A stretch of DNA of 64,000 bases from Carpediemonas membranifera BICM (taxonomy: Eukaryota; Protista; Fornicata), in assembly GCA_019828565.1 (NCBI GenBank), contig JAHDYR010000064.1, positions 789,162-853,161 on the forward strand, given 5' to 3'. Each line of letters starts with the position of its first letter. The stretch's first letter is position 1. The notes under the pieces are model-generated. The model had not been told where the DNA came from. It saw only the letters and a list, made by a program, of their open reading frames with translations, and did no database searches. Made by a program: the position numbers and the translations under genes. Positions 14,851-58,368 of this stretch are shown here, piece after piece.

Positions 14851-15474
14851 GTCCGTTTCAGTATTGTGAGCTTAAGATGCACCGTCTCACCACCTGAGAT
14901 TTGAGCATGATCGCCTGATCCATCTCAATCTCAAAACCGCCTGCGTGTCATCAATTCAGTCTCGACCCGCCCGAGCCCCTGGGGGCTCTGCGGGGGGCGT
15001 TGTCAGACTGGGGACGCGCTCGGGGTCAGGCCTGCCGACGATCCTCGATTCCGACTGTGCGCGCGTGGCGACAGAATATCGGCTGCAGATACGATGAAGA
15101 TGAACTGTGTGGACTCGGGGCAGTCAGTTACCGGCGTTCGAGGGTGTGGCAATGGCTTGATGCATGTCGCAATGGAGCGCGCGCTCTGGCGACAGGACGA
15201 TTGACACATTTATTGCCCTAGCTGTGCTGGTCCCAACCGGCCGAGCCCTCAACCGACTGGCTATCCTGCGCGATGACATTGAATGCAATCTCGGCCGAAA
15301 TGGACAGCTAACGCCTGATGAGCATAAAACGGCGAAAATTCACCAGAACAAGTCAAGAGGAGCGAGAAATCGCGATTGCTGCTGCCAAATTGATCCAGCT
15401 GGGACACAACGCGTCACCGAGTGCCACAGTCGTGCAACGCGTTACCCAATTGCAGAGAAACTGGAAAGAGGTAC

Positions 15475-17504
15475 ATGTCCAAGTCTGGTGCTTTGATCGA
15501 TCGTTTTGCTGAGGATATCAAGCCGAAGCTCGATCTCATCGATCGCCTTCGTGAAGTGGGCCTCGGTCAAATCGGCATCGGTCTGCCACAGATCGCTGTG
15601 GTTGGAGACCAGTCGACTGGTAAGTCTAGCATTCTCGTTCGTCTCGCACTCCCTAGGTTACACAGGAGAGTCTCGCCTGCATCTCCCTTCCTCGCGGTGA
15701 AGGTATCTGCACCAGATGCCCCATCGTCCTTCAGCTTCGGACCAGCGAGGACGATGTGGCTCAGGTGACCATCGCCTACGAGGACGCCCAGGGCAACAGC
15801 GTTAAGAAGCAATGCAAGGAGCATGAGGTCGACCAGTTCGTCCGCGAGGCCCAGAACGCCATCGCCGGCCACGGTAAGAACGTCATCGACAAGGAGATCA
15901 CCCTCCTCATCGAGTCCAACAAGGTGCCCGACCTCACATTGGTCGACCTGCCCGGCATCGTCCGCGTCGCCACAGAGGGTCAGGATGATGATATCGAGGA
16001 GCTCGTCAAGAACATGATCAAGCGCTACATCAGCAAGGAGGAGACGATCATCCTCGCCGTCTGCCCCGCCACTTCCGACCTCCCAACTGCGGAGTCCATC
16101 AAGATGGCACGCGAGGTCGACCGCAGTGGCTGCCGCACCATCGGTGTCCTCACCAAGGTGGACCAGGTCAACGCCGCCGATCGCGAGAAGATGATCGTCG
16201 AGCCCTGCACCGGCGAAGCCTTGGTGAACCTCTCTCTCGGCTACATCGCCGTCCGCAACAGAAGCTCCCAGGACCTGAAGAACAACATGTCCTACGAGAA
16301 GGCTTTTGAGGTCGAGAACGCCTTCTTCACGAAGCCCGAGTTTTCCAGGCTCAAGCCCACGATGTTCGGCCGCGACGCCCTCGCGATGAAGCTGACTGAG
16401 ATCCTTTCTGACCGCGTCAGTGAAAAGCTCCCCGACCTGAAGAAGGAGATCGCCAACCAGCTCGAGCAGGTCGCTTCTGAGCTGCAGGACCCCCGCTTCT
16501 CGAACGTCCCCCCTGAGGATGCACAGGGCCGCCGCTTCGTCCTGATGAAGATCCTCAACGACTCTGTCGCTGAGATCCGCGCCGTCCTTCAGCAGCAGAA
16601 CGCGGTGAAGCTTGACGGAAATTACCGCTGCCGCGACTTCTTCAATGCGATGGCGGATCTCTCCAAGATCATTCATGCTAACTCTGTTGACTTCACGATG
16701 GACCTTGAAGACGAGGAGTTCAAGGAGAAGATCCAAGAAGCACGCCTCGCGACAGCCGGCATGGGCGCCGGGGTGGGCAACTACCTCAGCCACCAGGCCG
16801 CTATGCCCTTCGTCCGTTACTATCTTGACTCCATCCGCGACGCCATCGACACCGCCATCGAGACTGCTTCAAAGGTTGTGCTCGACACGACTATCGACGC
16901 GATCAAGAGCAAGTGCAACGCCTATCCGCACGCCCGCCAAGTTGTCGAGGAGATGCTGTCTTCCTTCATCGAGGAGACCGCCGACTCCGTTAGAACGTCG
17001 GTATCTAACCTCATCCGCATGGAGCAGTCCGTCATCTACGCCTGCAACGAGAACTACGATAAGGCCCTCGCCCAGCGCATGGCTGACCGCCTTCCCGAGG
17101 CCGACATCTTCAGCGAGAACTTCCAGACGGGCGAGAGGTACTTTGACAAGGCCAAGATGGCCGCTTTCATGGAGGGTCTCAAGAACACCAACGCCAACCT
17201 CGAGCTTAACGACGACGAACGTCTCTACGACAACGTCCAGGTCTACATCTCCCATTGCGGCGACCGCCTAATGGACGCGATTCCTATGAAGATCGCATAC
17301 CACTTTATTCTGCACTGCTGGCAGACTTTCACGGACGACCTCGGGCAGATCAACTCCGAGGGCGCTGACAAGTTCATCGCTGACAAGAAGATCATGACGA
17401 TCATCAAGGAGGACCGCGAGCTGAGGGGCAAGCGCGTGGAGCTGGAGAACACGCGCAAGATCCTCATGGAGAGCAAGCGTGTCATCCGCGAGGAGTTCTT
17501 CTAA
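15475..17504 (+). CDS. Dynamin-family GTPase, Mx-like (666 aa); 29-nt intron 15637-15665
   Basis: G1 LPQIAVVGDQSTGKSS, signature LPRGEGICTRCP (restored by splicing), G3 DLPG, G4 TKVD, stalk and GED; no PH or PRD domain. Confidence 0.93.
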
Positions 17505-17879
17505 TCGGCCAGTAAACTCGGCTTTATTATTCTGATCCTGCCAGAGAGATGGGGCGACCCAACCCGGCAGTTTATAATGGTGGTCCAGGTACTTGCACGC
17601 CAAAACGACATCAAGAGAGAAGTCTGTAAATGTCTGGTTGCGATGACCCGTCGATCCTTCTTGTTCATCCTTCTGCGCCACACACTCGGTAATCTCCAGA
17701 TTTGCATCGATCCGGAATTGTCACTGGACCAGGGGCGGGATCCGGTCTGTTGTGGGCCGGGTGACAGATATTAGAGAACCGAAACCACGAATCCACATCC
17801 GAGATCGACTCAATCTCGAGATTGAGATCTCGGACCGGCAGCGACTCCAAGAAGATAGCACGACACAACCATCCATCCT

Positions 17880-27171: not shown

Positions 27172-27288
27172 TGTCACGTTGTGTTAGCTGTCCCAATCAG
27201 TTCTTTTATGATTGGTCAATGATCGTCAAAGTCAATTTAAAGTTAGTTCATCGTTTCCCTTCGGTGTTCCTGTCCCCTGCCCGTCACA
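27172..27288 (+). repeat. Family A 5' LTR (117 bp)
   Basis: Same sequence at 31550-31666 and, inverted, at 50781-50897 and 55060-55176. Confidence 0.96.
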
Positions 27289-27321
27289 GTTATATAACTT
27301 TCGATTAAGGCTACTTTCCCG

Positions 27322-30300
27322 ATGAACATTGACGCCCTGTCTAACTTTTTGGCCCCATGGTTGAATTCGGCTAAGCCGAAATCATGGTACTCGTTCCGAG
27401 ACAATTACCGTTCTTTTAACGCCCGCACGAACTCCGAAATTCCGATCTTCAGTCTCATTAGCCCCATTGTTATTCAGCTCCTGGAGCTGAGTGATCCTGA
27501 GCTCCATGCCTTTATCGCAGAAGCGCGCGCGGCACTTGAATCTCCTCGTGTGCCTGAAGTGGCCGAGGAGAATGTAGGCCAGATCGCTATGGTCGCCGCC
27601 GCGCCTGCAGAAGAAGAAGAGGACGAAGACACGTCTGACGACTCCGACTCATCCTCTTCCGATGATGACAATGAGCTGGCTCCCCCTCCCGAAGACTGGA
27701 ATGAGGCTTTTTATTGATCGCGTGAACCGCATCTTCGCCCCCCTTGATAAGCAAGATGCTCTCGACCGGTTCGACGATATCAAGTTCCCCGACGGTAACC
27801 TCTACGAGTCCATGCTAACCTATGTGTTCCTTTACTCGCGGATGATTATGAACTGCGCGCATGTCCGTCCGAAGGAGTCTTCGTTAGTTCAGAAGTTCCT
27901 GACCAACGTGCGCGGAGACCGTCTACGTGAGCGCTGCGCCACCTACAAGGACAAGCGATCGTTTGAACGAACGGCTCAGGCAGCTATTGCGCAAGCCAGA
28001 AAGGCTGAGCAAGCGGAGAGAGAAGGTCGCCGGTCCAAGAGTAAAGGGCAGGCATACGTTGACTTTCTCCTCGCAGCTCTGACCCAAGGTAAGCCTAGCC
28101 AAGCCTCTGCTCGTCCCCTGTTCCCGATCTGCCTCCTGCAGTGCCCCTCATCTGCGTTGTACGACACTGGCGCCACGGCCAACTTTATCTCAGAAGAGCT
28201 AGCTTCCTCGCTGCCCATTGAGCCTTCACTCGAGTCCCATCAGGTCCAGTTGTTCACTGGACAGAAGGTTAATACGACCCATGTAATGACGGCTGACTGT
28301 GAGTTCCCCTCCGCCACTGGCCACAAGCTCACGATCAAGACAAAGTTCATTATCATGCGCGAAAAGCTCCCAGCTCCTACAGTCATTGGGTTCCCCTTGC
28401 TCGTGTCCGCCGGATTGATCCAATTCCCCGCTGACGACCTCATTGTGGAGGTTGGGGATGATTACGACGACATGTTCGATGTGGATGCCCTACATGACGC
28501 AACTGAGACCACCACACCTACGATCATGAAGTTCGAGGAGCAGATATCGCGAATCTTGCAAGATCTACCTGGCCTCTTCGAGGAAGATCTGTCCGTGACA
28601 TCAACTCTGCCCCCCTTCAAGGTCAAGACCGAAGACCCAGACAAAGTCATTAACGTCTACCCCTACCGCTATTCCACACCTGTACGGACCGAGATTGTGC
28701 GCCAAGTCCATGAACTAGAGGCCCAGGGTATCATCCGGAGATCCACATCGGCATTCAACAACCCGATAGTCATGGCTAAGAAGCGGGGCGGAGCCCTACG
28801 ACTATGCCTAGATTTCCGAGCCCTCAATCTCATCACCTCGCCCGACAGTCACCCCCTGCCACTGATAGACAACCTCCTGGATCACCTCGAGGGAGCAAAA
28901 TTCTTCGCGGCTTTAGACCTGAAATCGGCTTTTCATCAAGTTCCCATGGCTAGTGATAGTTGCAAGTATACTGCCTTCACAGTGGATGGCCTGGGGAAAT
29001 TTGAGTACTGCCGCATGCCGTTTGGAATGAAGAATGCCCCTATCCAGTGTCAACGGGCTCTCGAAGCCGTTCTCAGTGACAGCCTGTACACTCAGGCCTT
29101 AGCGTACGTGGACGACGTCATCATATATGGGAAGGATAGGAACACCTTCTTGAAGAACCTCCGGGACGTTCTGCACAAGCTTCACGCGGCGGGTCTCCGC
29201 CTTAACGCTGCCAAGACAGTCCTCGGTGTCGAAGAAATCGACTACTTAGGATGGAGACTCAATGCACGAGGCCGCAGGATCGCTCCTGATCGCCTCCAGG
29301 CGATTCGCGACATCAAGCCCCCCACCAACCTGACTGAAGCCCGCTCGGTGCTAGGCCTGGCAAACTACTTCCGCCCCATCATCGAGAGGTATGCCGACAT
29401 CACAGAGCCAATCACTGTGCTCACCAGAGCCACTGCAGGCCCCTTCGCCTGGGGTTCCAGTCAACAAAGAGCCCTTGAGGCAGTCAAGACAGAGTTACTA
29501 ACGGAAAGGGTGCTACGACACCCACAACCTGATGAGACACTCCATCTGTACACCGACGCCTCGGACGTCGCCGTTGGCGGCATGCTCGCGAACGAGGAAG
29601 GGCACCCCATCGCCTTCTTCTCCCACACTTTGAACCCAACCCAGCGCCGCTGGTCCACCACTGAACAGGAATGTTACGGTCTTTACTTTGGAATGACGAA
29701 GATGAAGCGATATCTCGCCGGACGCCACTTCGTAACACATACTGACCACCGCAACCTGTTATTTGCCCACAAATCCACCAACGCCAAAGTCATTCGCTGG
29801 CGACTAGCGATGAATGAGTTCGACTTCGACCTCGTCCATATCCCTGGTCAAGAGAACACCGTTGCTGACACGCTATCTCGCCTAGTCCATGTGAGCACTG
29901 CAGAAGCATCGCTCAACAAGCGCGAGACGTTCAAGGCACACCATGGCGGTTCAGCAGGACACCTCGGTGTTCGCGCCACCTGCCGTCGCATCGCGAACGC
30001 GGGACAATCTTGGCCGGGTCTCCACAAAGACGTCCAACAATGGGTAAGTGAGTGCCCAGTCTGTCAGCTCACCCGTCTGAACGTTCAACCCGTCGGCCAG
30101 CACCCGCATGCATTGGCTGGGGCATACCCCTTCCAAGTGGTACAAATGGACCACATTGGTCCGCTAGATGGTGTGGTGCAACCCAGATGAAGAGGAAGTG
30201 ATTTAAAGAGTCAACCCTCGGTGGGGAAAAGGGTTAAAACTAAAATATCAATTAAACGCACTACAGATGGTCACCCCTCACTCCGGCACGCACTAGTCGT

Positions 30301-31244
30301 AGTTGACACATTCTCTAAGCTCACCCAAGTGTACCCGACACAGTCGACCTCGACAGCAGAGGTCATCAACTCTTTAGAACACTGGATCAAACACTATGGA
30401 ATACCCGAAGCTATCGTCTCTGACAACGCATCCGGATTCTCTTCCCAGGCATTCAAGTCATTCGTGGCCGAGAATGGCATTAGGCATGAACTCGGTACAG
30501 CTTATCACCCGGCAGGCCGTGGTGTAGTTGAAAGACGCAACGCCGAGATCAAGCGCCATTTGAAGGCTTTTACCCTTGAATCAGGCAGGAGCTGGCCTGA
30601 GGAAGTCCCCAACACAGTGATTCTGCTCAACGACATCCCCTATGAGTACAGCGGCCTTTTCAGCCAACGCTGCTCTCTTCGGTAAGCAGCTCCACACGAC
30701 CAACAACGCGACCGATGACTCCCCTATTTCCCTCGAGCACTTCCGCTCATCCCTCCTCGCCCTTCAGGCCCACCAAGGATCAGCAGTGTCACGCGAGCCC
30801 CCTTCGGAGACGCACGCACCAATCGTTGGCGCAGCGGTTCTACTCCGGCGAGACACGCCCGTTGGCCCTATCATCCGAGGCCCTATGCGAGTCCTCTCAC
30901 CTGGCGACCACCCTAACGTCTACACCCTCAAGGACCTGACAACTCTTGCAACCGTCACAGCGCACGCAGACTCTCTTTATACGTTTAAGGGGTCATATAC
31001 AGATGCTGAGCTGCAACGATGGGCCGCCCGCCTGCACAACGAGTATGTCGTCCGAGGAGTTGACGCCCACCGCTGCAGGCAGAGGAACCTCCAATTCCAC
31101 GTGCTCTGGCACGGCTACGACGATAGTGAGGCAACTTGGGAGCCTTTTACCCGAGACCTCGACAAGCTCGCTGCCCTTGACGACTATCTTGCTGAGCATC
31201 CCCAATTGCTCAAGAAGATGAAGAGCGCCCGTAAAGCTCTCTAG
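27322..31244 (+). pseudogene. Family A gag-pol (interrupted)
   Basis: PR YDTGA, RT YVDD, RH TDAS, IN zinc finger (H..GH...CPVC) and DDE core, GPMRV, chromodomain. Broken by homopolymer indels at about 27710 and 30660 and by a solo-LTR insertion. Confidence 0.92.
30172..30265. mobile_element. 94-bp solo LTR of a fifth family, inserted in the family A integrase
   Basis: TGT...ACA ends flanked by a GATGG duplication (30167-30171, 30266-30270); the insert is absent from copy A2 at about 52180. Confidence 0.85.
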
Positions 31245-31549
31245 TTGTCGTCATCTACTTAATAATACTCCACATCTCTCATTGCGGAGGCAGAAACCGC
31301 AGATTTGCAAGTGCGGCTCTTGTATTGTGTGCTTTGCGTTGAGAATGATGCGGAACACGACGCCGTTCAAGAATATTGATGTTGATTAGTTACTTAGCGG
31401 TTCGTTGTATGATTTTGCGTGTATCCGGACAGATTTTCCACCATGCGAGTTCACCACCATCCTTCTGAATCAATTGATGAGGGGCCGAATGGCGACCCCA
31501 ATTGAACCCCCTACGAACATAGACGGCCTATGCCCACTCATGGAGGCAG

Positions 31550-31666
31550 TGTCACGTTGTGTTAGCTGTCCCAATCAGTTCTTTTATGATTGGTCAATGA
31601 TCGTCAAAGTCAATTTAAAGTTAGTTCATCGTTTCCCTTCGGTGTTCCTGTCCCCTGCCCGTCACA
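31550..31666 (+). repeat. Family A 3' LTR
   Basis: Identical to the 5' LTR; preceded by the short purine tract GGAGGCAG and followed by TSD CCTAT. Confidence 0.96.
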
Positions 31667-32234: not shown

Positions 32235-35200
32235 CGCCAGACGGCGGAGTCACTCGACTGGTAACTCGGGTGACAGAAATATTTCCCGCTTACATAGATA
32301 TCGCGCTGTAAATATTTCTCCCCCGTTTGGATTGACTAGTGAATGAATATGTTTGCAACGTCAGACGTTTTTCCGAAATTGTTCAATTCTGTTATGATTA
32401 TTTGGTGAATGGCAAGGCCAGCGGAGCCAACACTTCGGCTTGAGAGGTCGAGGTTGATACGATACGATCTCAAGGATGGGATCTTGCGTCTCATACGGGC
32501 AGTTCAGTTGTTCAAGAGCGAACTGAAACCGCGGAGCCATGCTCCCAATCCCCACTATCGAGAGGGTGACGCTCGGCAACACGTAAGGTCGAGCGAGGTA
32601 ACTTATTGTTATTCCGGCTTACACAGAGTTAGACCCGCGAGAACGCGACACAAGAAATTACCTACCCCCCCCCTGTGGGAATAGACGTAGTCTGCCGGAT
32701 CGTCAGCCTGTCTGACTACCGTGGACCGCTGCACATAAGCTGTCTTGCCATATGTAATGCGTGGCAATGCATTTATTGTGTCAGCAGCAAATTCGGCAGT
32801 GGGAGAGCCTTTCGACGTCTTCTCGTTTCTTGGTCACGTCTGGCTTGGCAGTGCTGTGGTCTTCTGATGCCGTCTGCGTTAAGTGGTGATCTCGGTTGCT
32901 GGTGATACCTTGCCTTGCTTTCCTCTTGTCGGATGCAACAAGCTGCTCACTGCTTCAAGATTGACGGCCAGGGTCAAGTCGAGCTCTTTCTCTCTGAATG
33001 TCGTCGCTGTGCCGCCTGTTGCTTGCGTCCATTGATCACCGATCCGCGAGACCGATATTGGTCGATGCTCACGTCATTGTACGGTCGTATGTCGCCTGTC
33101 GTTTGTTTGCTCAGCGATAATATTCCCCTTCGGCGCACTACACGGCACCAGCCCTGTAATCTCCGAAACAAAGCATGCGTTTATGTTAAGCTACGAGGTT
33201 ATTACCGCTACCGATAAATTCACCTGTTATATATGCTCTCTAGCAGATCCAACTTATGCTGCAGCTGACCAGTGCTTGGACTGATCACAGCCTTGGCCGC
33301 GGCCTCACCCCGCGGTGTCGGAGTGATCTGAATCTGACTGCTTCGCCGCGTCATCGTTGCTGGGGTTATGCTGCTGCGTCGCGGCGACATCTTCGGCAGT
33401 GGAACAGTGTTGTTGCCGACAGACGACCCGATGCCCGGCTCCGGACTCGCGTGCTTCTCCCGCCGGGGCGACACAAGACCGCCGTTGTTCCGTTGCCGTG
33501 CGAGTATCGGCTGCAGCTGCCGTTCCTGCTCGTACAGCGCCAGTCGATCGGCCATCTCGTCCATGTTCTTGCGGAGGAACGATATCTGCTGATTCAGCCT
33601 GGCCACCTCGGCCTTGAGCGCGTCACGCTCACCCAGCTGGCCAGTCAAGGACTCGACCTCCTTGGTCAGCTGGGCCACCGTCGACTTCAGCATGGTCGTG
33701 TTCTTGTCAGCGGGCGTCTGCCGTTGGATCGTGACACTCTTCGTTGGGACCTGTGTGGCCCTGGCGGCGTATTGGATGGCAGCAACGTTGTCAACGATGG
33801 ACTCGGCCACGGGCGACAGGCATGTGATGATCCCGGCCATGCTGTGCCCCGACAACACCCGCTGGAGCAGCAGAGTCAGCTTCGAGTCACGATACGGCGC
33901 CCACCGGCCCAGTGCCAAGGCTGTAATGCACGTGCCCAGCGCCAGGAGGGACTTGTTGATGTGTGAGCCCTCCTGCTGTCGCCGACCGTCGCCCTCCTTA
34001 CCACGCTCAGCTGAGGCCCGCTCAGAGCCAGCCAGGTCGACCAGGCTGATCGTGGCGTCCGTCTCAGCCGTGATCACTCGGAGAATGATCATTGCATGTG
34101 ACCGCGAGCTCGCTTCATTCAGACTGGTGCTGCTCCGAGTCCGACACATCGTTCCCCGCCTCAGCAGCTGCTCGGCGTCATCGATCGTCACCACCGGTTC
34201 CGACTTCATGTCCGGGAGCACCCAGCCCTTGGTAGCATGCTCCCGTAGGGTCAAGAACGGTCCTTGCACCCGTCCCTCCTCGTCCTCTGCGGCGGGGCCC
34301 CTTGCTGCGAGGAGGTCCCGGATCTTCTCGTTGTAAACCTCGATGAAGGCCATCTCCACAGTGAACTGGGGCGGGCGGCCAGTGCTCCGGCCAGCCCGGT
34401 CGGTGCTGACGGTGATCTTGCTCATGAGGTTAGCGATGACGTGCCCCACAATCCCGGGGGTGCCCGGCTGGCCGAGCATCGTGTAGGTGTTGTGGGTCAC
34501 CAGCATGCTCTCCGTGACAACGAAGCGGCAGGTCGGGCCCTCCATGGTGAAGCCGTAGTAGTCGTCCTCGGGCTGGGGGGTGACGGTGAAGCCGACGGGG
34601 TCGGGCCCGCTGCTGTTGGGCAAGGGGACCACCTTGCGGCATGGGAGGGGCGCGGTGGCGTGGATCATAGCGCAGGGGCGGTCCTCATGGGAACCCACGG
34701 TGACAGGGAACCCGAGGGAGCGGGCGATGAACTTGATGTCCTCCTCGACCTGGCCCTGTGCGTGGGTGATGACGAAGGCGCCACTGTCGAGCGTGCCGTT
34801 GGTGTCGATGAACCCGGCCAGGAGGCTGAGCCGCTGCTGCACGGAGCCGACCTTGATGGCTAGGGGAACGTGTTTGGCGGAGCAGAGGTCGTTGGCCCGC
34901 AGCCATGTCAGGAAGGGGCTGTCGAGACCGTCGGCACCGAGGAGGTTGTACGTGTCAGCCTCGTCAGCCGGAACAAGGCGGCAGCCGACCGACTTGACCG
35001 CCAACGTGAACCCTTCGACAACGTCTGGGTCGGCTGTGGTGAGTTGGGGGACGCCCTTGTGGCCCAGGCTCCCAGCACCGAGCCAAGCACCGAGGGTCCA
35101 CTCGAACGAGGGGGCGTCAGGGACGTCATCGACCACGGCCGGCGGTGAATTAGCGAGGGCTGCAGGCGTGTCGAACCGCTCGATGCGGGGGGCGTGGAAC

Positions 35201-35806
35201 ATGAAGGACCGCTCGCGGAGGCTGAGGTGCATGCATTCGTCGTCGAGGAAACGTCTGACTGGCATGTCGAGGATGGTGCCGTCGTGCAGGACGGGTAAGC
35301 CTTCGTGCACAGCGTTGGGCTGCTCCATGGTGGTCTTGAATGCCTCGGCGGCGTCAGCATCTGGGAAAGTCTCGGATCCGGCTCTGACGGCGGTGACCTC
35401 ATTGGCCTCGTCGCGGCTGACGAGGACGAACTCGACACGACAGTCGCTGTCCTTGGTCAAGGTAGGTCCAGCACCGCTCATCATGAATGATATGACGTGG
35501 GACATGTTGCAGGTGAACGCCCCGTCCCCCGTCTCAACCCGCGCCATCTCCTCCCGGCCTCGGGCGACTGTCAGGACGCGCTTGGGGGTCCCCTCGGCAC
35601 CCATGATCATGTCGCCGGCCTGGATGCCCTCAGCGCACTGGAACTGACCGCTGGACATAAGAACCTTGGTGCCGCGGGCGAGACACTTGCCCGATCCCGT
35701 CGTCCCGTACGCCATGAGCGCTCCCGGGATACCTCTGATTGCTGCTGCGACTATTGGGTAAGCCACTTGCTGGAAAACCTCCTCCTGAGTCGCGAGAGGA
35801 GGGAAT
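32235..35806. repeat. Left arm of 3.57-kb inverted duplication (partner 42714-46286)
   Basis: Reverse complement of 42714-46286 with a few indels and at least two substitutions. Confidence 0.93.
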
Positions 35807-36354
35807 ACCTTGTCGAAAGTAAACTCTCTGGGTTGCCGAGACCGCGACGTTCGAGAGGGTGGTGTGACTGTCAGCGCATTGGTTTGCTCCTCCACCACGA
35901 ATACCTTGTTGTGGTTCCGCGGGTCCTGCTTCTCTGCATTGATCAACGGCCGCATCCTGACGGCAACAAAGATCTTCGCCCAGTCAGGCTCCTTGCTCAC
36001 TCGTCGCAATAAACCATTTGGAGTGTTTGATCTGCTGATGGTCGGAGTCTTGAGCTTCGTATCTGCGTGGCATGAAGAGGGGCGGGCCGTTGAACGGGAC
36101 GACGACGCACCTGCCCGGGGGATAAGGGGTAACGCATCGGCATCGTTCAGCTGTGGATTGAGATTCAGGTGAAAACGTGTCCGTAATTCCTCAGTCTTGC
36201 GCCGTACAGGCCGCTCCATGCTCCTGGGATGCCTAACAGACTCCAAGGGGGACGATAGGTAGGCTGGGCTGCTGTCAAACGGCTTAAGAGCTACAGGCTG
36301 CGGCGTTGCCTTTGGTTGTTTGCGTCGCCGCTTCGGCTTCCTCTGAGCAAGCAT
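33220..36354 (-). CDS. Kinesin motor protein precursor containing an intein
   Basis: IFVAVRMRP, FTFDKVF, AYGTTGSGK|intein|TYTM, FIEVYNEKIRDLL, NEASSRSHA, LVDLAGSER, INKSLLAL, PYRDSKLT; C-terminal coiled coil. Confidence 0.95.
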   Translation of the reverse strand: MLAQRKPKRRRKQPKATPQPVALKPFDSSPAYLSSPLESVRHPRSMERPVRRKTEELRTRFHLNLNPQLNDADALPLIPRAGASSSRSTARPSSCHADTKLKTPTISRSNTPNGLLRRVSKEPDWAKIFVAVRMRPLINAEKQDPRNHNKVFVVEEQTNALTVTPPSRTSRSRQPREFTFDKVFPPLATQEEVFQQVAYPIVAAAIRGIPGALMAYGTTGSGKCLARGTKVLMSSGQFQCAEGIQAGDMIMGAEGTPKRVLTVARGREEMARVETGDGAFTCNMSHVISFMMSGAGPTLTKDSDCRVEFVLVSRDEANEVTAVRAGSETFPDADAAEAFKTTMEQPNAVHEGLPVLHDGTILDMPVRRFLDDECMHLSLRERSFMFHAPRIERFDTPAALANSPPAVVDDVPDAPSFEWTLGAWLGAGSLGHKGVPQLTTADPDVVEGFTLAVKSVGCRLVPADEADTYNLLGADGLDSPFLTWLRANDLCSAKHVPLAIKVGSVQQRLSLLAGFIDTNGTLDSGAFVITHAQGQVEEDIKFIARSLGFPVTVGSHEDRPCAMIHATAPLPCRKVVPLPNSSGPDPVGFTVTPQPEDDYYGFTMEGPTCRFVVTESMLVTHNTYTMLGQPGTPGIVGHVIANLMSKITVSTDRAGRSTGRPPQFTVEMAFIEVYNEKIRDLLAARGPAAEDEEGRVQGPFLTLREHATKGWVLPDMKSEPVVTIDDAEQLLRRGTMCRTRSSTSLNEASSRSHAMIILRVITAETDATISLVDLAGSERASAERGKEGDGRRQQEGSHINKSLLALGTCITALALGRWAPYRDSKLTLLLQRVLSGHSMAGIITCLSPVAESIVDNVAAIQYAARATQVPTKSVTIQRQTPADKNTTMLKSTVAQLTKEVESLTGQLGERDALKAEVARLNQQISFLRKNMDEMADRLALYEQERQLQPILARQRNNGGLVSPRREKHASPEPGIGSSVGNNTVPLPKMSPRRSSITPATMTRRSSQIQITPTPRGEAAAKAVISPSTGQLQHKLDLLESIYNR
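34489..35685 (-). mobile_element. Intein (399 aa) with degenerate LAGLIDADG endonuclease, in the kinesin P-loop
   Basis: Block A CLARGTKVLM, block B FTCNMSHV, block C WTLGAWLGAG, block D KHVP, block E LLAGFIDTNG, block F EDDYYGFT, block G LVTHN, +1 residue Thr. Confidence 0.95.
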
Positions 36355-36650
36355 TCTGCCCAAAAGTTCGTTCGAGGAAAATGCGATGCTTGTGCCATAA
36401 CCTGCACCAGTCAGAAACTGAGCACAGAGACAGAAACTTGACGTTTATGACCTCCACATGCTTACAGAAGAGAGGCCCTGCAGCCGAGTTGATAGCCGCG
36501 GTCGGGCAGGATGTGCTGTTTGAAAATTTTGCGAAGGCAGCCCAGTTTAGACTAGCATGCTTTGGTGGGATGACGGGCCAGCCATGGGCCAGCAGCGAAG
36601 CCATACTCGGTCGCTGTAAAAATGCTTCTTCTGCGAAGCAGTTACGACAC

Positions 36651-38357
36651 ATGCTCAGCTATCCAAAACATCTCTCTGGACATTTCCCAGTGGTTCTAGA
36701 ACGGTTATCTGCTGGGAAACGGGATATCAAGGCCTATATTCGCTACGTTGGCTCTTTGCAGCAGATAGAGGAGCAAACGGCGAAGGCTCTTAGCAACGCG
36801 CTCCAGCGGACGGGAAAGGGCATATTCTCAGATGTATTAGAGGGACCATGGAAGCAGGAGATGGCTCGTATCGCCGCCATGCGCGATACCGCCCTGGCCA
36901 GCGCTGACTGGTACCGCGACCAACAGAGCACCGTGAAGAGCTTCAAAGAGACGCTCAAGAAGCGCATCTCGGAGAGTCAGACATGGTATACAGGCCAGAT
37001 CTCCTCTCTCACGACGTCTTGCAATGGCGTCGAGACGGCATTGCGCCACTTGCGTGATTCGAATTCCCGCCGGACCAAGGCAGCGCAGGCCTACTCTAAG
37101 GCGACCGGCAAGAAGAAGGAGAGTGCCCGGCAACAGCTAGAGGCGGCCCATGCGGACGCGGTGACGCAGTACGGCGAGTACACTCGCGCCGTGGGGGCTG
37201 CCCGGATCGCCTTTGCGTCGACACAAGCGGCGATCAGGGATAAGTTGACCCAGCTCGAGGCCACAGACAGGCAGAGAATCGCTGTCATGCGGGAGTCACT
37301 CCGTAAGCTTGTCCAGAGGGCGGCGGACACCTCTCGTGTGGGCGATATCCACGTATCCCGCGTGTACGCTGAACTCGGGTCCGAGCGGTTGTCAGATCTT
37401 GACAAGGAAATATCCGAGACCGTCAGGAGCATCCTCAGCAACGGTGATGGCCCTCTCGTCAACATGCTGAGTGCTATGCGTCTCGCCCCGTTCGAAACGG
37501 ACGAGCGGGTTGATCGCATCGCCGAGTCAGCCGGGTGTGAGCCGCCTAGCATTACCTTAGCCGCCCCCGAGCCCCGTCTACCCTCGCTGCGGGTTCCCCC
37601 AGCCGAGTTCGTCTGTCCGATCGCCCACACGGTCATGACGGACCCTGTTGTTGCTGCAGACGGCCAGACGTATCAGAGAGGTGCCATCACTGAGCATCTA
37701 CTTAACAGCGTGGTGTCTCCAGTGACGATGGAGAAGATGGGAAGCAAGCTCCTCTTTGCCAATGCCGCCCTGAAAAAGCAGATCGACGATTTCCTGGGAT
37801 TCACTCAGCCACCCCTGACTGACATCATCAACACGGAGACCGGGCCGGACCTTGCTGATGACGGGGACGAATCCAGCTCAGACTCTGATCACCATTCAAT
37901 CAACTTCGAGGCGAGGGTCGTCGACTCCGATGACGAGTCGACCGCGCCTGGGACGCCGTCATCGCCCTTCCATGACATTCCCATGGCTACGATACCCCCA
38001 AGGGCGCCCTCCATGTCCCAGGCGATGCCCTCACCACCCGACTCGACCCAGCTTGTCCGGGACGCCCTCAGGGACCTGGACATGCTCTATCCCACAGAAG
38101 AGGCCCCGCCATCCCCTGCACCGAGGTCCGAGGTCCGCTTTGTCCGATCGTCGTCCGCATACAGCCTCGGGTCCCCTGCCCGGTCACCGTCTGCCAGCTC
38201 GTTGACGTCGCCCTCGGCTAGGGTATGGGGAGATGGGTCGGCGAAGTCACCACTGGGCGGGCAGCTCGCCCATAGCGAAGAGGCGCTCGTCCAGCATGTG
38301 GAGGAGTCAGACGAGGATACTAGCGGGCTTGGGAATTCATTCAAGCTTCCGATGTGA
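36651..38357 (+). CDS. Putative F-BAR plus U-box E3 ligase
   Basis: FCH-like start (F.VVLERL..GK......Y......IEE..AK.L), long helical region ending QLEATDRQRI; U-box PAEFVCPIAHTVMTDPVVAADGQTYQRGAI...SPVT...NAALKKQI. Confidence 0.8.
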   Translation: MLSYPKHLSGHFPVVLERLSAGKRDIKAYIRYVGSLQQIEEQTAKALSNALQRTGKGIFSDVLEGPWKQEMARIAAMRDTALASADWYRDQQSTVKSFKETLKKRISESQTWYTGQISSLTTSCNGVETALRHLRDSNSRRTKAAQAYSKATGKKKESARQQLEAAHADAVTQYGEYTRAVGAARIAFASTQAAIRDKLTQLEATDRQRIAVMRESLRKLVQRAADTSRVGDIHVSRVYAELGSERLSDLDKEISETVRSILSNGDGPLVNMLSAMRLAPFETDERVDRIAESAGCEPPSITLAAPEPRLPSLRVPPAEFVCPIAHTVMTDPVVAADGQTYQRGAITEHLLNSVVSPVTMEKMGSKLLFANAALKKQIDDFLGFTQPPLTDIINTETGPDLADDGDESSSDSDHHSINFEARVVDSDDESTAPGTPSSPFHDIPMATIPPRAPSMSQAMPSPPDSTQLVRDALRDLDMLYPTEEAPPSPAPRSEVRFVRSSSAYSLGSPARSPSASSLTSPSARVWGDGSAKSPLGGQLAHSEEALVQHVEESDEDTSGLGNSFKLPM

Positions 38358-39911: not shown

Positions 39912-42514
39912 ATGCACGACGAGGGTCGTAAGGAAGACGGAGAGACGTCTATCGTCGTCTCTGTCCGAGTTCGCCCTGAAACGTCCCGTGAGATATCGTT
40001 TGCCCCTTCTTCATTTTGGCTTACTCAGTTTTCGAGGCAAATACGCCAATCCATTGCCAATACAGATACACAATGATGCCGTTATTCTTCTAGACCCAGA
40101 TACACGAAGTACCGACCACGGACGACGCCAACGGGACTTCGTATTCGACCATGTTTTCACCGAATCGGCGTCAAACGAGGCAATCTTCCGTACTGTTGCA
40201 CTCCCTCTAGTGCGCCGCTCAATCGAGGGCTACAACGGCACTTGCTTTGCATACGGTGTGACTGGCGCAGGTTTGTCCCCCTCATCCCCGAACTAACCCA
40301 GGCAAGACCTACACAATGATTGGATCCCCAGGCGTCCGCGGGCTGATCCATCTCACTGCGGACGCCCTCTTTCAGGCGAGGAACGAGGCGGTGGATTCCA
40401 AGATCACAATCAAGATGTCCTTCCTTGAGATCTACAACGAGCACCTCTGCGACCTGCTGACTCACACGCGGAACATGAACCTGGACATCGTGGAGGACCC
40501 CCACAAGGGAATATGCGTCCCTGGCCTAACCGAGCAAGAGATCAGCACCACTTCCCAGGTCACTACGCTCCTCCGACAGGGCCAGGCGAGGAGGTCCACC
40601 GCCCCGACAGGCGCCAACGAGGCGTCGTCGAGGTCACACGCCGTGCTACAGTTTACGGTTATCAGCCGGCCTCTGGATGACAACTCGGCGCCAGGACACA
40701 TCGGAAAGCTATCCCTCATCGACCTGGCCGGGTCCGAGAGGGCCGCGGCGACTGAGAACCGCGGTCTTCGGATGACAGAGGGTGCAGCCATCAATAGGAG
40801 CCTGCTTGCACTGTCCAACTGCATCAACGCACTCGGGGATATCCAGGTTACCGGGCGGAAGGTCTTTGTCCCTTACCGTGACTCGAAGCTGACTCGACTG
40901 CTCAAAGACTCCCTCGGTGGCAACACAGAGACGCACATGGTGGCCAACATACCCCCGTCGGCATTGTACTTCGAGGAGATCCTCAACACCCTCAAGTACG
41001 CGTATAGAGCTAAGAGCATCAAGAAACGCGTGAGACGAAACGAGCTTGCTCTCGAGGCCACGCCAGCACAGTACGCGCAGATCATTGCTGGTCTTAAGCG
41101 AGAGCTGGAGAGATACAAGCGGGGCACCCCACAGACTGCGCCAGTCGATGTATCTACTGTATCAGTAAGGGATTCAGAGACAATCAAATCTGAGATGATG
41201 AAGGTCGAGCAAGACCTAGCCGACGCCGATGAGCGGCGTAAGGCAGCTAGCCACGAGGAGGAGAGCATCAGACGCGAGCAGGCGGTCGATCCAGGCCGGG
41301 CAAAGTTTGAGACGCTGAGCAAGCAGCTGCTGGATAACTACCAGAGCATTCTTGGTCTCAGATTCCACATCTCCCAGGACGATAGAGAGATTGCCAGCAA
41401 GAAGATGAGGCTTGAATCCCTGAGCAACAGTCCAGACACGCCCGAGGCCAGGCAGGAGCGGCTTGACCAGATGGCCGGGTTGATCGAGAGGTCGCAGTCG
41501 AGGGAACACATGATGAAGCGGCTGGAGACAGAGGAGCAGCACCGAGTGAGCCTCCAGCAGCAGCTGATGGCCATGAAATCTGGTACCCGAGAAGAAGTGC
41601 TTGATCTGACGCTCAAGCTCAGCAGGGCTCGGGTCGAGCTGTACGCCGCAAGGGCCGAGACGTTTGCCACACAGAAGAGGATGCTGGCCATGGAGCAGAC
41701 TCTCGCCGGCCTTGTAGGGAAGATCAAGAGCTCAGGCACTCCGCCAGCAGCCCCGCCGTCTTCAGCGAGACCGATTGCGACGACCCCGGCGACAACCAAG
41801 GTCACCCCGACAACGGCGACGCCGATCCAGCCGCCGAGGAGGGCAGCGCCAGTGAACGTCACACCTGCCACCGAGCCCCCGAGGCATGTGGTTCGAGAGA
41901 CCCCACACGTCAGCCGAATTGACTTGACCCGGCCTGCGTCTCAGATTCAGCCGAGACACCGCACACCTTATGCATCGAGCACGCGATATGCGGCCACGCC
42001 ACATGCCTCAGCGGTAGACCGACCGTCAACGGCGACGCACTACTCGGCGAGCCATCCGAGGCAATCGTCGGTCGGAGCCAACCTCAACCGGCCATCAACC
42101 GCGCTAGCTTCATCGAGTGCGTCTGCCAGGCGCTCCGAGAGCAGTGGACCGACCCGCCCTGCCCCAAGAAGCACGCTCTTTGCGGCACGGACGCCGAGCA
42201 AGTCAACCGTGTCACCCAACACGTTGACTCAGTCCCACGCCCCCAGCAGCAGCGTCGTGACAGGGTTACCGCGGCATTCGCCCGTCAAGGCCAGTACATA
42301 CGACCGGGAGTCGCGTTTGTCAATGCTTCATCGCATGGCCGAGCCAGCATCCAGCACATACTCGTCCTATGCGTCCAAGCGGGTTGGAGCATCCAACAGT
42401 GCATTCACACCGGCCCGCTCAACCGGGCTGGATGTCGAGCTCAAGACAAAGTGGGCCGCGTTGCAGCGGTCACACAGGGCACTGGGATATGTCTCAACGG
42501 AGCGGGGAAGGTGA
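39912..42514 (+). CDS. Kinesin-8-like motor (KIF18/KIF19 type), intein-free; introns 39998-40028 and 40271-40301
   Basis: IVVSVRVRP, FVFDHVF, FAYGVTGA|GKTYTM (after splicing), SFLEIYNE, GKLSLIDLAGSERAA, EGAAINRSLLAL, VPYRDSKLTRLLKDSLGGN, NTLKYA.RAK.I. Confidence 0.93.
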
Positions 42515-42713: not shown

Positions 42714-45300
42714 ATTCCCTCCTCTCGCGACTCAGGAGGAGGTTTTCCAGCAAGTGGCTTACCCAATAGTCGCAGCAGCAATCAGAGGTATCCCGGGAGC
42801 GCTCATGGCGTACGGGACGACGGGATCGGGCAAGTGTCTCGCCCGCGGCACCAAGGTTCTTATGTCCAGCGGTCAGTTCCAGTGCGCTGAGGGCATCCAG
42901 GCCGGCGACATGATCATGGGTGCCGAGGGGACCCCCAAGCGCGTCCTGACAGTCGCCCGAGGCCGGGAGGAGATGGCGCGGGTTGAGACGGGGGACGGGG
43001 CGTTCACCTGCAACATGTCCCACGTCATATCATTCATGATGAGCGGTGCTGGACCTACCTTGACCAAGGACAGCGACTGTCGTGTCGAGTTCGTCCTCGT
43101 CAGCCGCGACGAGGCCAATGAGGTCACCGCCGTCAGAGCCGGATCCGAGACTTTCCCAGATGCTGACGCCGCCGAGGCATTCAAGACCACCATGGAGCAG
43201 CCCAACGCTGTGCACGAAGGCTTACCCGTCCTGCACGACGGCACCATCCTCGACATGCCAGTCAGACGTTTCCTCGACGACGAATGCATGCACCTCAGCC
43301 TCCGCGAGCGGTCCTTCATGTTCCACGCCCCCCGCATCGAGCGGTTCGACACGCCTGCAGCCCTCGCTAATTCACCGCCGGCCGTGGTCGATGACGTCCC
43401 TGACGCCCCCTCGTTCGAGTGGACCCTCGGTGCTTGGCTCGGTGCTGGGAGCCTGGGCCACAAGGGCGTCCCCCAACTCACCACAGCCGACCCAGACGTT
43501 GTCGAAGGGTTCACGTTGGCGGTCAAGTCGGTCGGCTGCCGCCTTGTTCCGGCTGACGAGGCTGACACGTACAACCTCCTCGGTGCCGACGGTCTCGACA
43601 GCCCCTTCCTGACATGGCTGCGGGCCAACGACCTCTGCTCCGCCAAACACGTTCCCCTAGCCATCAAGGTCGGCTCCGTGCAGCAGCGGCTCAGCCTCCT
43701 GGCCGGGTTCATCGACACCAACGGCACGCTCGACAGTGGCGCCTTCGTCATCACCCACGCACAGGGCCAGGTCGAGGAGGACATCAAGTTCATCGCCCGC
43801 TCCCTCGGGTTCCCTGTCACCGTGGGTTCCCATGAGGACCGCCCCTGCGCTATGATCCACGCCACCGCGCCCCTCCCATGCCGCAAGGTGGTCCCCTTGC
43901 CCAACAGCAGCGGGCCCGACCCCGTCGGCTTCACCGTCACCCCCAGCCCGAGGACGACTACTACGGCTTCACCATGGAGGGCCCGACCTGCCGCTTCGTT
44001 GTCACGGAGAGCATGCTGGTGACCCACAACACCTACACGATGCTCGGCCAGCCGGGCACCCCCGGGATTGTGGGGCACGTCATCGCTAACCTCATGAGCA
44101 AGATCACCGTCAGCACCGACCGGGCTGGCCGGAGCACTGGCCGCCCGCCCCAGTTCACTGTGGAGATGGCCTTCATCGAGGTTTACAACGAGAAGATCCG
44201 GGACCTCCCTCGCAGCAAGGGGCCCCGCCGCAGAGGACGAGGAGGGACGGGTGCAAGGACCGTTCTTGACCCTACGGGAGCATGCTACCAAGGGCTGGGT
44301 GCTCCCGGACATGAAGTCGGAACCGGTGGTGACGATCGATGACGCCGAGCAGCTGCTGAGGCGGGGAACGATGTGTCGGACTCGGAGCAGCACCAGTCTG
44401 AATGAAGCGAGCTCGCGGTCACATGCAATGATCATTCTCCGAGTGATCACGGCTGAGACGGACGCCACGATCAGCCTGGTCGACCTGGCTGGCTCTGAGC
44501 GGGCCTCAGCTGAGCGTGGTAAGGAGGGCGACGGTCGGCGACAGCAGGAGGGCTCACACATCAACAAGTCCCTCCTGGCGCTGGGCACGTGCATTACAGC
44601 CTTGGCACTGGGCCGGTGGGCGCCGTATCGTGACTCGAAGCTGACTCTGCTGCTCCAGCGGGTGTTGTCGGGGCACAGCATGGCCGGGATCATCACATGC
44701 CTGTCGCCCGTGGCCGAGTCCATCGTTGACAACGTTGCTGCCATCCAATACGCCGCCAGGGCCACACAGGTCCCAACGAAGAGTGTCACGATCCAACGGC
44801 AGACGCCCGCTGACAAGAACACGACCATGCTGAAGTCGACGGTGGCCCAGCTGACCAAGGAGGTCGAGTCCTTGACTGGCCAGCTGGGTGAGCGTGACGC
44901 GCTCAAGGCCGAGGTGGCCAGGCTGAATCAGCAGATATCGTTCCTCCGCAAGAACATGGACGAGATGGCCGATCGACTGGCGCTGTACGAGCAGGAACGG
45001 CAGCTGCAGCCGATACTCGCACGGCAACGGAACAACGGCGGTCTTGTGTCGCCCCGGCGGGAGAAGCACGCGAGTCCGGAGCCGGGCATCGGGTCGTCTG
45101 TCGGCAACAACACTGTTCCACTGCCGAAGATGTCGCCGCGACGCAGCAGCATAACCCCAGCAACGATGACGCGGCGAAGCAGTCAGATTCAGATCACTCC
45201 GACACCGCGGGGTGAGGCCGCGGCCAAGGCTGTGATCAGTCCAAGCACTGGTCAGCTGCAGCATAAGTTGGATCTGCTAGAGAGCATATATAACAGGTGA
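42714..45300 (+). pseudogene. 5'-truncated duplicate of the intein-containing kinesin (intein 42835-44030)
   Basis: Begins mid motor domain (FPPLATQEEVF) and lacks the first ~185 codons; 1-bp indels at about 43940 and 44208. Confidence 0.88.
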
Positions 45301-46286
45301 ATTTATCGGTAGCGGTAATAACCTCGTAGCTTAACATAAACGCATGCTTTGTTTCGGAGATTACAGGGCTGGTGCCGTGTAGTGCGCCGAAGGGGAATAT
45401 TATCGCTGAGCAAATAAACGACAGGCGACATACGACCGTACAATGACGTGAGCATCGACCAATATCGGTCTCGCGGATCGGTGATCAATGGACGCAAGCA
45501 ACAGGCGGCACAGCGACGACATTCAGAGAGAAAGAGCTCGACTTGACCCTGGCCGTCAATCTTGAAGCAGTGAGCAGCTTGTTGCATCCGACAAGAGGAA
45601 AGCAAGGCAAGGTATTACCAGCAACCGAGATCACCACTTAACGCAGACGGCATCAGAAGACCACAGCACTGCCAAGCCAGACGTGACCAAGAAACGAGAA
45701 GACGTCGAAAGGCTCTCCCACTGCCGAATTTGCTGCTGACACAATAAATGCATTGCCACGCATTACATATGGCAAGACAGCTTATGTGCAGCGGTCCACG
45801 GTAGTCAGACAGGCTGACGATCCGGCAGACTACGTCTATTCCCACAGGGGGGGGGGTAGGTAATTTCTTGTGTCGCGTTCTCGCGGGTCTAACTCTGTGT
45901 AAGCCGGAATAACAATAAGTTACCTCGCTCGACCTTACGTGTTGCCGAGCGTCACCCTCTCGATAGTGGGGATTGGGAGCATGGCTCCGCGGTTTCAGTT
46001 CGCTCTTGAACAACTGAACTGCCCGTATGAGACGCAAGATCCCATCCTTGAGATCGTATCGTATCAACCTCGACCTCTCAAGCCGAAGTGTTGGCTCCGC
46101 TGGCCTTGCCATTCACCAAATAATCATAACAGAATTGAACAATTTCGGAAAAACGTCTGACGTTGCAAACATATTCATTCACTAGTCAATCCAAACGGGG
46201 GAGAAATATTTACAGCGCGATATCTATGTAAGCGGGAAATATTTCTGTCACCCGAGTTACCAGTCGAGTGACTCCGCCGTCTGGCG
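42714..46286. repeat. Right arm of 3.57-kb inverted duplication
   Basis: Reverse complement of 32235-35806. Confidence 0.93.
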
Positions 46287-47190: not shown

Positions 47191-48019
47191 GGCAGCGAGC
47201 TTGTCGAGGTCTCGGGTAAAAGGCTCCCAAGTTGCCTCACTATCGTCGTAGCCGTGCCAGAGCACGTGGAATTGGAGGTTCCTCTGCCTGCAGCGGTGGG
47301 CGTCAACTCCTCGGACGACATACTCGTTGTGCAGGCGGGCGGCCCATCGTTGCAGCTCAGCATCTGTATATGACCCCTTAAACGTATAAAGAGAGTCTGC
47401 GTGCGCTGTGACGGTTGCAAGAGTTGTCAGGTCCTTGAGGGTGTAGACGTTAGGGTGGTCGCCAGGTGAGAGGACTCGCATAGGGCCTCGGATGATAGGG
47501 CCAACGGGCGTGTCTCGCCGGAGTAGAACCGCTGCGCCAACGATTGGTGCGTGCGTCTCCGAAGGGGGCTCGCGTGACACTGCTGATCCTTGGTGGGCCT
47601 GAAGGGCGAGGAGGGATGAGCGGAAGTGCTCGAGGGAAATAGGGGAGTCATCGGTCGCGTTGTTGGTCGTGTGGAGCTGCTTACCGAAGAGAGCTGCATT
47701 GGCCGAAAGGCCGCTGTACTCATAGGGGATGTCGTTGAGCAGAATCACTGTGTTGGGGACTTCCTCAGGCCAGCTCCTGCCTGATTCAAGGGTAAAAGCC
47801 TTCAAATGGCGCTTGATCTCGGCGTTGCGTCTTTCAACTACACCACGGCCTGCCGGGTGATAAGCTGTACCGAGTTCATGCCTAATGCCATTCTCGGCCA
47901 CGAATGACTTGAATGCCTGGGAAGAGAATCCGGATGCGTTGTCAGAGACGATAGCTTCGGGTATTCCATAGTGTTTGATCCAGTGTTCTAAAGAGTTGAT
48001 GACCTCTGCTGTCGAGGTC
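47191..48019 (-). mobile_element. Family A copy 3 fragment (integrase and chromodomain), host of element C
   Basis: Near-identical to 51272-52101; cut within the chromodomain tail with no 3' LTR. Confidence 0.9.
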
Positions 48020-56124: not shown

Positions 56125-56155
56125 CCCCCTGACGGATTTGGGAAGGACCAGGTCG

Positions 56156-58231: not shown

Positions 58232-58368
58232 AGGCTTGGATTAGATCTAATATGCTCCTACTGGAGGAGGGAAAGAACTTTAATAAAGAGAAAACCCAAT
58301 GGTTGCAAATATGGTGTAATCTATAAGTCATAAACTATGTAAGTATTGGGTAAGACCCACTACACCCC

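What the first reader, a model, noticed from the sequence alone, without database searches (positions are those of the whole stretch)
34489..35685. Intein inside the Walker A loop of a eukaryotic kinesin motor
Seen: the kinesin P-loop AYGTTGSGK-TYTM is split in frame by 399 aa that begin CLARGTKVLM and end LVTHN, with Thr as the +1 residue and blocks B and F present. Known: inteins favour P-loops of ATPases such as RFC, MCM and archaeal ATPase A. Eukaryotic nuclear inteins are classically in VMA1, PRP8, GLT1, CHS2, ThrRS and RNA polymerases, with a large expansion in the metamonad Anaeramoeba. I do not recall a cytoskeletal motor as a standard host but cannot exclude a report. Inference: the +1 Thr is the Mg-binding Walker A residue, so the motor cannot hydrolyse ATP until splicing occurs. 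Splicing could therefore act as a post-translational switch.
Basis: partly seen in the sequence, partly recalled or inferred. Interest (0 to 1): 0.93.

Follow-up and report, generated by a model that had tools for sequence, protein, structure and literature searches.

The report
Gene-hopping intein inside a kinesin motor
A self-removing protein parasite (an intein) sits in the ATP-binding loop of a kinesin motor of the free-living protist Carpediemonas membranifera; kinesin inteins were already reported in Anaeramoeba, but here close sister copies with a dead DNA-cutting domain sit in the ATP/GTP loops of several unrelated genes, so this protist looks like a second, apparently unreported, intein-rich eukaryote.

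Summary
Observation confirmed. A 399-aa class 1 intein with the PI-SceI/VMA1 fold splits the Walker A loop (GSGK|T) of a kinesin-8-like gene of Carpediemonas membranifera. Both endonuclease catalytic acids are lost; splicing residues are intact. Likely-RNA contigs retain the insert.

The claimed novelty mostly fails: Gallot-Lavallee 2023 (PMC10710043) reports kinesin and dynein inteins in Anaeramoeba (exact site not checkable). No evidence supports a regulatory switch.

What appears new: its closest relatives sit at GK|T/S of unrelated genes of the same genome (RNF213-like, 89% nt; SMC6, 87%). A second subfamily occupies SRP receptor, SNF2 and a DEAD helicase (91-97% nt). Every C. membranifera copy examined lacks a working endonuclease, and copies are mosaics, pointing to ectopic conversion. 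Kinesins of Dysnectes brevis and an unidentified eukaryote carry non-sister inteins at the same site (AU p 8e-17). No paper in the library links inteins to Carpediemonas. The scan had already noted most of these hosts one by one on other DNA of this genome.

Best reading: a selfish, probably virus-derived P-loop intein family spread non-allelically, lost cutting activity, and its copies still exchange DNA. Splicing is inferred, not shown.

The parts
33220..36363 (-). Host gene: kinesin-8-like N-terminal motor, single ORF without spliceosomal introns (1047 aa from TTG; NCBI model 1044 aa from ATG 36354)
35686..35985 (-). N-extein part of the motor, ending in Walker A AYGTTGSGK
34489..35685 (-). 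Intein, 399 aa, class 1, PI-SceI/VMA1 architecture (Hint + DNA-recognition-like insert + LAGLIDADG domain)
35668..35685 (-). Block A with nucleophile Cys1
35497..35517 (-). Block B, FTCNMSH (N60, H63; VMA1 type)
35116..35475 (-). Insert in the Hint domain at the place of the PI-SceI DNA-recognition region (approx. residues 71-190; role inferred from the fold match)
35068..35097 (-). LAGLIDADG block C; catalytic Asp replaced by Ala204 (codon 35074-35076)
34795..34821 (-). LAGLIDADG block E; catalytic Asp replaced by Asn296 (codon 34798-34800)
34549..34569 (-). Block F, EDDYYGF (class 1; no class 3 Cys)
34489..34503 (-). Block G with His398 and terminal Asn399
34486..34488 (-). +1 Thr: splicing nucleophile and Mg-binding Walker A residue
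   Evidence: role from established P-loop biochemistry
33748..34488 (-). C-extein part of the motor with intact switch I (NEASSRSH), switch II (DLAGSE) and PYRDSKLT
42714..46286 (+). Inverted, 5'-truncated duplicate of 32235-35806 with a second intein copy (42835-44030); 99.86% identical, three 1-nt indels in C/G runs (two break the frame); real duplicate or assembly artefact undecided
40271..40301 (+). 31-nt spliceosomal intron in the P-loop Gly codon of the neighbouring intein-free kinesin-8 (39912-42514), ending 5 nt before the equivalent intein site

Best explanation
A selfish class 1 intein of a P-loop-specialist, VMA1/PI-SceI-like family. It is translated inside the kinesin and removes itself by the standard route (Cys1 N-S shift, attack by +1 Thr, Asn399 cyclisation), rejoining GSGK-TYTM into a normal motor [inferred from motifs, fold and purifying selection; not shown]. 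It persists because only exact loss spares the active site [established]. The family probably came from large DNA viruses, whose copies keep both catalytic acids [inferred; direction not shown]. It then spread non-allelically among P-loop genes of the Carpediemonas lineage [relatedness shown]. An endonuclease-active member with relaxed specificity for GK|T/S-coding DNA probably made the cuts, with repair using short junction homology [inferred]. The endonuclease then decayed [shown at sequence level], and copies in different genes have gone on exchanging DNA by ectopic gene conversion [mosaics shown]. That keeps them alike and blurs the insertion date.
For: Fold and motifs. Rough dN/dS 0.13-0.20 in the splicing parts against 0.41-0.71 in the middle. 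Sisters: RNF213-like 85% aa/89% nt and SMC6 79%/87%, clade 100/100; then a dynein AAA2 intein of assembly GCA_002919055.1 (96/92), which keeps the block C Asp; then XRCC3 (97/97). 224 of 271 extracted relatives sit at GK|T/S; about 85% keep each catalytic Asp. Virus-like contigs hold near relatives with intact motifs, and giant-virus inteins head the BFVD list. Mosaics: runs test p about 0.001 among the three sisters. The DEAD-helicase intein has 55 private sites in its first 200 nt and 13 in the other 800. SMC6 shares only GGC AAG with the other sites, little for pure homology capture. C. membranifera lacks NHEJ and keeps a-EJ and HR (PMC8516963).
Against: No endonuclease-intact member was found in C. 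membranifera among the eight hosts examined (the genome could not be searched whole). Parsimony puts Ala/Asn at the two catalytic positions already in the ancestor of the three sister copies, which also fits spread after death. Splicing itself is untested. The viral relatives are only about 30% identical and their place in the tree is weakly supported.
Confidence: 0.62

Rival explanations
1. Spread without its own endonuclease: catalytically dead copies were pasted into new P-loop genes during repair of breaks from other sources (alternative end joining or HR on short homology, or cutting in trans by a free-standing or viral endonuclease), so hopping is recent and still going on. Splicing is as in the main reading.
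For: All C. membranifera copies examined lack both acids or have lost the domain. SRP-receptor and SNF2 inteins are 97% identical end to end (dS 0.07) in unrelated hosts. Kinesin and RNF213-like sites share 17 nt across the junction (TGSGK|TYT). The organism lacks NHEJ and has a modified HR system. An unchecked scan note lists a free-standing intein-endonuclease gene in this genome (s1-536069).
Against: Ectopic conversion, shown here, can by itself make old copies nearly identical and carry dead alleles between them. SMC6, SNF2 and SRP-receptor sites share only 6-9 nt. GGC AAG are also the preferred codons of this GC3-rich genome. Exact in-frame insertion at one codon boundary is hard to get without a targeted cut.
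Confidence: 0.23
2. Domesticated switch: splicing is conditional (redox, metal, temperature or substrate) and gates the motor, and perhaps a whole set of NTPases at once.
For: The +1 residue is catalytic, so unspliced protein is probably inactive. Conditional splicing is known for some inteins (mentioned in PMC10710043). The intein has ten Cys and the host is an anaerobe. The splicing domain is under purifying selection.
Against: Purifying selection on splicing is expected for any intein in a needed gene. The site is the default target of the family in phages and viruses. Three kinesin inteins are unrelated to each other. Hosts share no pathway. There is no Cys in the eight N-extein residues before Cys1 for a disulfide trap. 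No conserved intein-bearing orthologue was found.
Confidence: 0.11
3. Not a working intein: an assembly chimera of repeated intein DNA, removal at RNA level, or a non-splicing relic in a dispensable kinesin paralogue.
For: The window has several near-identical inverted duplicates with homopolymer indels. Contigs cross the junctions by only 22 and 14 nt, below the tool's 31-nt rule, and the run type is a guess. The host is divergent and sits beside a more canonical kinesin-8.
Against: Independent short-read contigs cross both junctions with no mismatch and show no skipping joint. The ends are not GT..AG. All splicing and motor motifs are intact, and the ORF is open for 1047 codons. The copy has its own substitutions against its sisters.
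Confidence: 0.04

Closest known systems
Anaeramoeba inteins, including the kinesin intein shared by A. ignava and A. flamelloides, the dynein inteins and the cluster 1 P-loop inteins (Gallot-Lavallee et al. 2023, PMC10710043)
   Same: Metamonad nuclear genes, cytoskeletal motor hosts, spread among P-loops of non-homologous proteins, viral relatives, introns near the empty site of a paralogue.
   Different: Other lineage (Fornicata). Class 1 with Cys1, whereas their P-loop cluster 1 is class 3 with an atypical first residue. Here copies in unrelated genes are 87-97% identical in DNA, lack catalytic acids and are mosaics. They suggested NHEJ might help; C. membranifera lacks NHEJ. Their kinesin site could not be read (supplement not held).
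Sce VMA1 intein (PI-SceI/VDE)
   Same: Same fold and domain order (TM 0.74), NxxH block B, DYYG block F, insertion right after Walker A Lys (site from own knowledge).
   Different: About 19% identity; +1 Thr, not Cys; both catalytic Asp (D218, D326 in PI-SceI, from own knowledge) replaced; many non-allelic hosts instead of one allele.
Hom_end/Hom_end_hint P-loop inteins of giant viruses, phages and Bacteroidota DnaB
   Same: Same family and same GK|T/S target.
   Different: Those mostly keep both catalytic acids; the Carpediemonas group forms its own clade with a longer insert in the Hint domain.
Kinesin-8 (Kip3/KIF18/KIF19) motors
   Same: Best matches of the C-extein; all nucleotide and microtubule-binding motifs present.
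   Different: Only 35-40% identical; the subfamily is not settled; no close orthologue was found.

Membership tests
Class 1 intein | In-frame insert absent from host homologues, at a conserved site | tested here: met
Class 1 intein | Hint domain formed by both ends of the insert | tested here: met
   PF05203 E 1.4e-17; model and Foldseek
Class 1 intein | Cys/Ser1, block B His, block F Asp, His-Asn end, +1 Cys/Ser/Thr | tested here: met
   C1, H63, EDDYYGF, H398-N399, +1 T
Class 1 intein | Insert kept in the mRNA | tested here: inconclusive
   Likely-RNA contigs cross both junctions (22 and 14 nt), cover the gene body only and show no skipping joint; run type guessed, one data set; ends not GT..AG
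Class 1 intein | Self-excision with extein ligation | not testable with these tools
   needs a reporter or MS
Active LAGLIDADG homing endonuclease | Pseudo-dimeric LAGLIDADG fold | tested here: met
   (PI-SceI, I-DmoI)
Active LAGLIDADG homing endonuclease | Two catalytic acidic residues (blocks C and E) | tested here: not met
   A204 and N296; Asp in about 85% of relatives
Class 3 intein (Anaeramoeba cluster 1) | No N-terminal nucleophile; W-C-T signature with block F Cys | tested here: not met
   Cys1 present, block F Asp
Allele of the Anaeramoeba kinesin intein | Same site in an orthologous kinesin and sister position in the intein tree | not testable with these tools
   Dataset S1 not held; no identified Anaeramoeba sequence retrieved
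One allelic family of kinesin inteins | Inteins at the same kinesin site form one clade | tested here: not met
   AU p 7.8e-17 for three; p 1.2e-5 for C. membranifera + D. brevis
Conditionally splicing (sensor) intein | Splicing depends on a physiological cue | not testable with these tools
   no extein Cys near Cys1; no direct data
Kinesin motor | RxRP, Walker A, switch I SSRSH, switch II DLAGSE | tested here: met

The most novel reading that the evidence does not exclude
In Carpediemonas, inteins whose endonuclease is catalytically dead still colonise new, unrelated P-loop genes through the host's unusual break repair or a cutter acting in trans, needing only a few shared bases at the Gly-Lys codons. 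The kinesin/RNF213/SMC6 and SRP-receptor/SNF2/DEAD groups would then be fresh snapshots of endonuclease-independent intein transposition in a second intein-rich eukaryote lineage.
Probability: 0.23. Interest if true: 0.82.

Novelty: new variant of a known kind. Interest (0 to 1): 0.6.

Why it matters
Gallot-Lavallee et al. left open whether Anaeramoeba is an outlier and how inteins reach non-allelic sites. C. membranifera and D. brevis suggest that Fornicata are a second intein-rich group that went unnoticed in a published genome. The copies are close enough in DNA to read junction homology, conversion tracts and the order of endonuclease decay directly. The organism lacks NHEJ, which removes one proposed route. 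Three separate invasions of one kinesin codon boundary, plus dynein and myosin hosts, show that motors are ordinary targets of P-loop inteins. Removing the inserts would also correct the annotation of SMC6, XRCC3, SNF2 and RNF213-like proteins in a genome studied for its odd DNA processing. An intein that tolerates many GK|T/S contexts may be useful for engineering.

Tried and rejected
RNA-level removal: rejected (ends TG..AC, no shift possible, introns are 31 nt, no skipping joint). One allelic kinesin-intein family: rejected by AU test. Class 3: rejected. A DNA pattern scan of metagenome contigs for AYGxTGxGK-C gave 24 chance or intron hits and no intein; it also missed the known case L008, so the blank is weak. 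A search for an intein-free orthologue found only 35-37% kinesins. AlphaFold of the motor+intein precursor gave pLDDT 49, uninformative. NCBIfam gave only weak intein hits. IMG/VR gave relatives mostly at 23-38% identity, most with both acids, no close donor. Paper searches for intein with Carpediemonas, Dysnectes, Fornicata or metamonad found nothing relevant beyond the Anaeramoeba paper. The C. membranifera genome paper has no 'intein' in its text or nine supplements. No citable paper on PI-SceI D218/D326 was held. The organism of GCA_002919055.1 could not be confirmed; C. frisia is my guess.

Full report
Observation. The ORF at 33220-36363 (-) is a kinesin whose Walker A loop is interrupted after Lys by 399 residues (nt 35685-34489), with Thr following. 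The flanks match Pfam Kinesin (E 1e-74); the insert matches Hom_end_hint end to end (E 1.4e-17) and Hom_end weakly. Eight uninterrupted kinesins align with a clean gap at GK|T. The AlphaFold model of the insert (pLDDT 93.9) matches PI-SceI over its length (E 1.5e-24, TM 0.74). All class 1 splicing residues are present. The motor halves keep RxRP, switch I and switch II and are closest to kinesin-8 at 35-40% identity.

Source and expression. The protein lies on JAHDYR010000064.1 of GCA_019828565.1, the assembly whose other proteins are named Carpediemonas membranifera. Contigs of a run guessed to be RNA cover the gene body but not the intergenic DNA, cross both junctions without mismatch (by 22 and 14 nt, short of the tool's 31-nt rule) and show no joint that skips the insert. 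Runs X1 and X2 give identical numbers and count as one data set. The breaks near the junctions are expected, because a sister intein branches off there: all 40 listed variant letters equal the RNF213-like copy. The insert ends are TG..AC and the neighbouring gene's introns are 31 nt. RNA-level removal is therefore very unlikely; protein splicing is inferred, not shown.

Endonuclease. Blocks C and E carry Ala204 and Asn296 where 218 and 215 of 255 extracted relatives have Asp (that set is redundant and holds a few mis-cut rows). From established LAGLIDADG chemistry the domain should not cut. Rough pairwise dN/dS is 0.13-0.20 for the splicing ends and 0.41-0.71 for the middle (NG86, my boundaries, GC3 bias not modelled).

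Relatives. The nearest inteins are not in kinesins. They sit at GK|T/S of an RNF213-like AAA/E3 protein (85% aa, 89% nt) and of SMC6 (79%, 87%) in the same genome, clade support 100/100. Next come a dynein heavy chain of assembly GCA_002919055.1 (45%; keeps the block C Asp; organism unconfirmed, probably C. frisia) and C. membranifera XRCC3. A second subfamily occupies SRP receptor alpha, a SNF2 ATPase and a DEAD-box helicase at 91-97% nt identity, and an AAA ATPase holds another member. That makes eight host families checked here, all at Walker A and all without both acids. The wider clade (support 100/99) also includes Dysnectes brevis kinesin and ArsA/Get3-like inteins, myosin and ABCF inteins from one metagenome sample, apparently an unidentified eukaryote, and inteins on virus-like contigs, two of which keep intact motifs. 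Outside it, the family is common at GK|T/S in phages, giant viruses and Bacteroidota DnaB.

Kinesin site. Two more kinesins carry an intein at the same boundary: D. brevis EP00768_P005707 and a kinesin-14-like gene in JGI 3300044998. The three inteins are not one clade (AU p 7.8e-17; the two fornicate ones p 1.2e-5; 22 rows chosen from the hits, LG+G4, rest left out for run time; midpoint root only, so no donor is inferred). This means separate invasions or replacements.

Mosaics. Among the kinesin, RNF213-like and SMC6 copies the informative sites cluster by pair (runs test p about 0.001 at one site per codon), though uneven rates could add to this. The DEAD-helicase intein is clearer: 55 private sites in its first 200 nt and 13 in the other 800. 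Copies in unrelated genes therefore exchange DNA, and high identity does not date an insertion. This is why I rank 'active cutter first, decay and conversion later' (0.62) above 'spread of dead copies' (0.23). The latter stays open: no intact copy was seen, parsimony gives dead codons in the ancestor of the three sisters, and kinesin and RNF213-like sites share 17 nt across the junction. C. membranifera lacks NHEJ and keeps a-EJ and a modified HR (PMC8516963).

Switch idea. The precursor should be inactive, since Lys and Thr of Walker A are separated (established knowledge; the precursor model was too poor to use). That holds for every P-loop intein and is the usual reason they resist loss. 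Nothing here points to regulation (0.11).

Prior art. PMC10710043 reports one kinesin intein shared by both Anaeramoeba species, dynein inteins, movement among P-loops of unrelated proteins, viral sources, and introns next to empty sites in paralogues. The motor host is therefore known; the exact site could not be checked. That paper's main text does not mention Carpediemonas, the genome paper does not mention inteins, and library searches found no link. The library lacks most subscription papers, and one NCBI product is already auto-named 'Hom end-associated'. Earlier notes of this scan list most hosts one by one, and 36 notes matched 'intein'; they were leads only, and those I could not fetch are not counted.

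Exteins were searched apart by reference, and the neighbouring kinesin's exons were translated apart and not joined; the joined search of a spliced model was left out. In one local script I did join the two kinesin extein parts to BLAST them against proteins already fetched; that string was sent to no database.

Verdict. A real intein of a known kind in a host class already reported. The interest lies in an apparently unreported intein-rich fornicate with closely related, endonuclease-dead, mosaic copies across unrelated P-loop genes. Interest 0.6; new variant of a known kind.

Noticed in passing
window 39912-42514 (+), introns 39998-40028 and 40271-40301: Intein-free kinesin-8 about 3.5 kb from the host gene, with a 31-nt intron ending 5 nt before the equivalent intein site, the intron/intein exclusion pattern described in Anaeramoeba; may be chance.
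   Followed up: partly
window 42714-46286 vs 32235-35806; 9026-12981 vs 13636-17593: Two near-identical (99.85%) inverted duplications of 3.6 and 4.0 kb: one carries a 5'-truncated kinesin with the intein, the other overlaps a dynamin gene. Indels in the first lie in homopolymer runs; real rearrangements or long-read assembly artefacts.
   Followed up: partly
window 27172-31666; 47191-48019; 50781-64000: Ty3/Gypsy-type LTR retrotransposons with a chromodomain and 117-bp LTRs; a 99.7% identical inverted copy and several further pol fragments.
   Followed up: no
L012 8001-11519 and L009/L010 8001-10751 (JGI 3300056625 and 3300056624): A myosin head (GESGAGK|T) and an ABCF ATPase with inteins of the same clade, apparently in an unidentified eukaryote; I know of no reported myosin intein (not searched in the literature).
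   Followed up: partly
L008 1100-2100 (JGI 3300044998): Intron-rich kinesin-14-like gene of an unidentified eukaryote with a 298-aa intein at GSGK|T, closer to viral and bacterial inteins than to the Carpediemonas group.
   Followed up: partly
P0151 and P0138 (Dysnectes brevis, EukProt): Kinesin and ArsA/Get3-like ATPase with P-loop inteins, suggesting more inteins in this fornicate.
   Followed up: partly
L117 657-1652 (DEAD-box helicase intein): Chimeric intein: first 200 nt from another donor, the rest about 98% identical to the SRP-receptor and SNF2 inteins; the host gene has a second near-identical copy (KAG9394690.1).
   Followed up: yes
L005 501-15386: 4961-aa RNF213/mysterin-like protein in a metamonad, with the intein in the P-loop equivalent to the third AAA module of RNF213.
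   Followed up: partly
L011 (ENA ERZ23498485): Virus-like contig (TBP, histone, M28 peptidase, RING proteins; possibly mirusvirus or NCLDV) whose large helicase-like protein holds a near outside relative with intact endonuclease motifs.
   Followed up: partly
P0129 and P0125: Proteins with back-to-back inteins separated by only a few extein residues (HN-TGK-C in P0129).
   Followed up: no
window 36306-38357 (+): U-box protein with a long helical N-terminal part, head to head with the kinesin.
   Followed up: no
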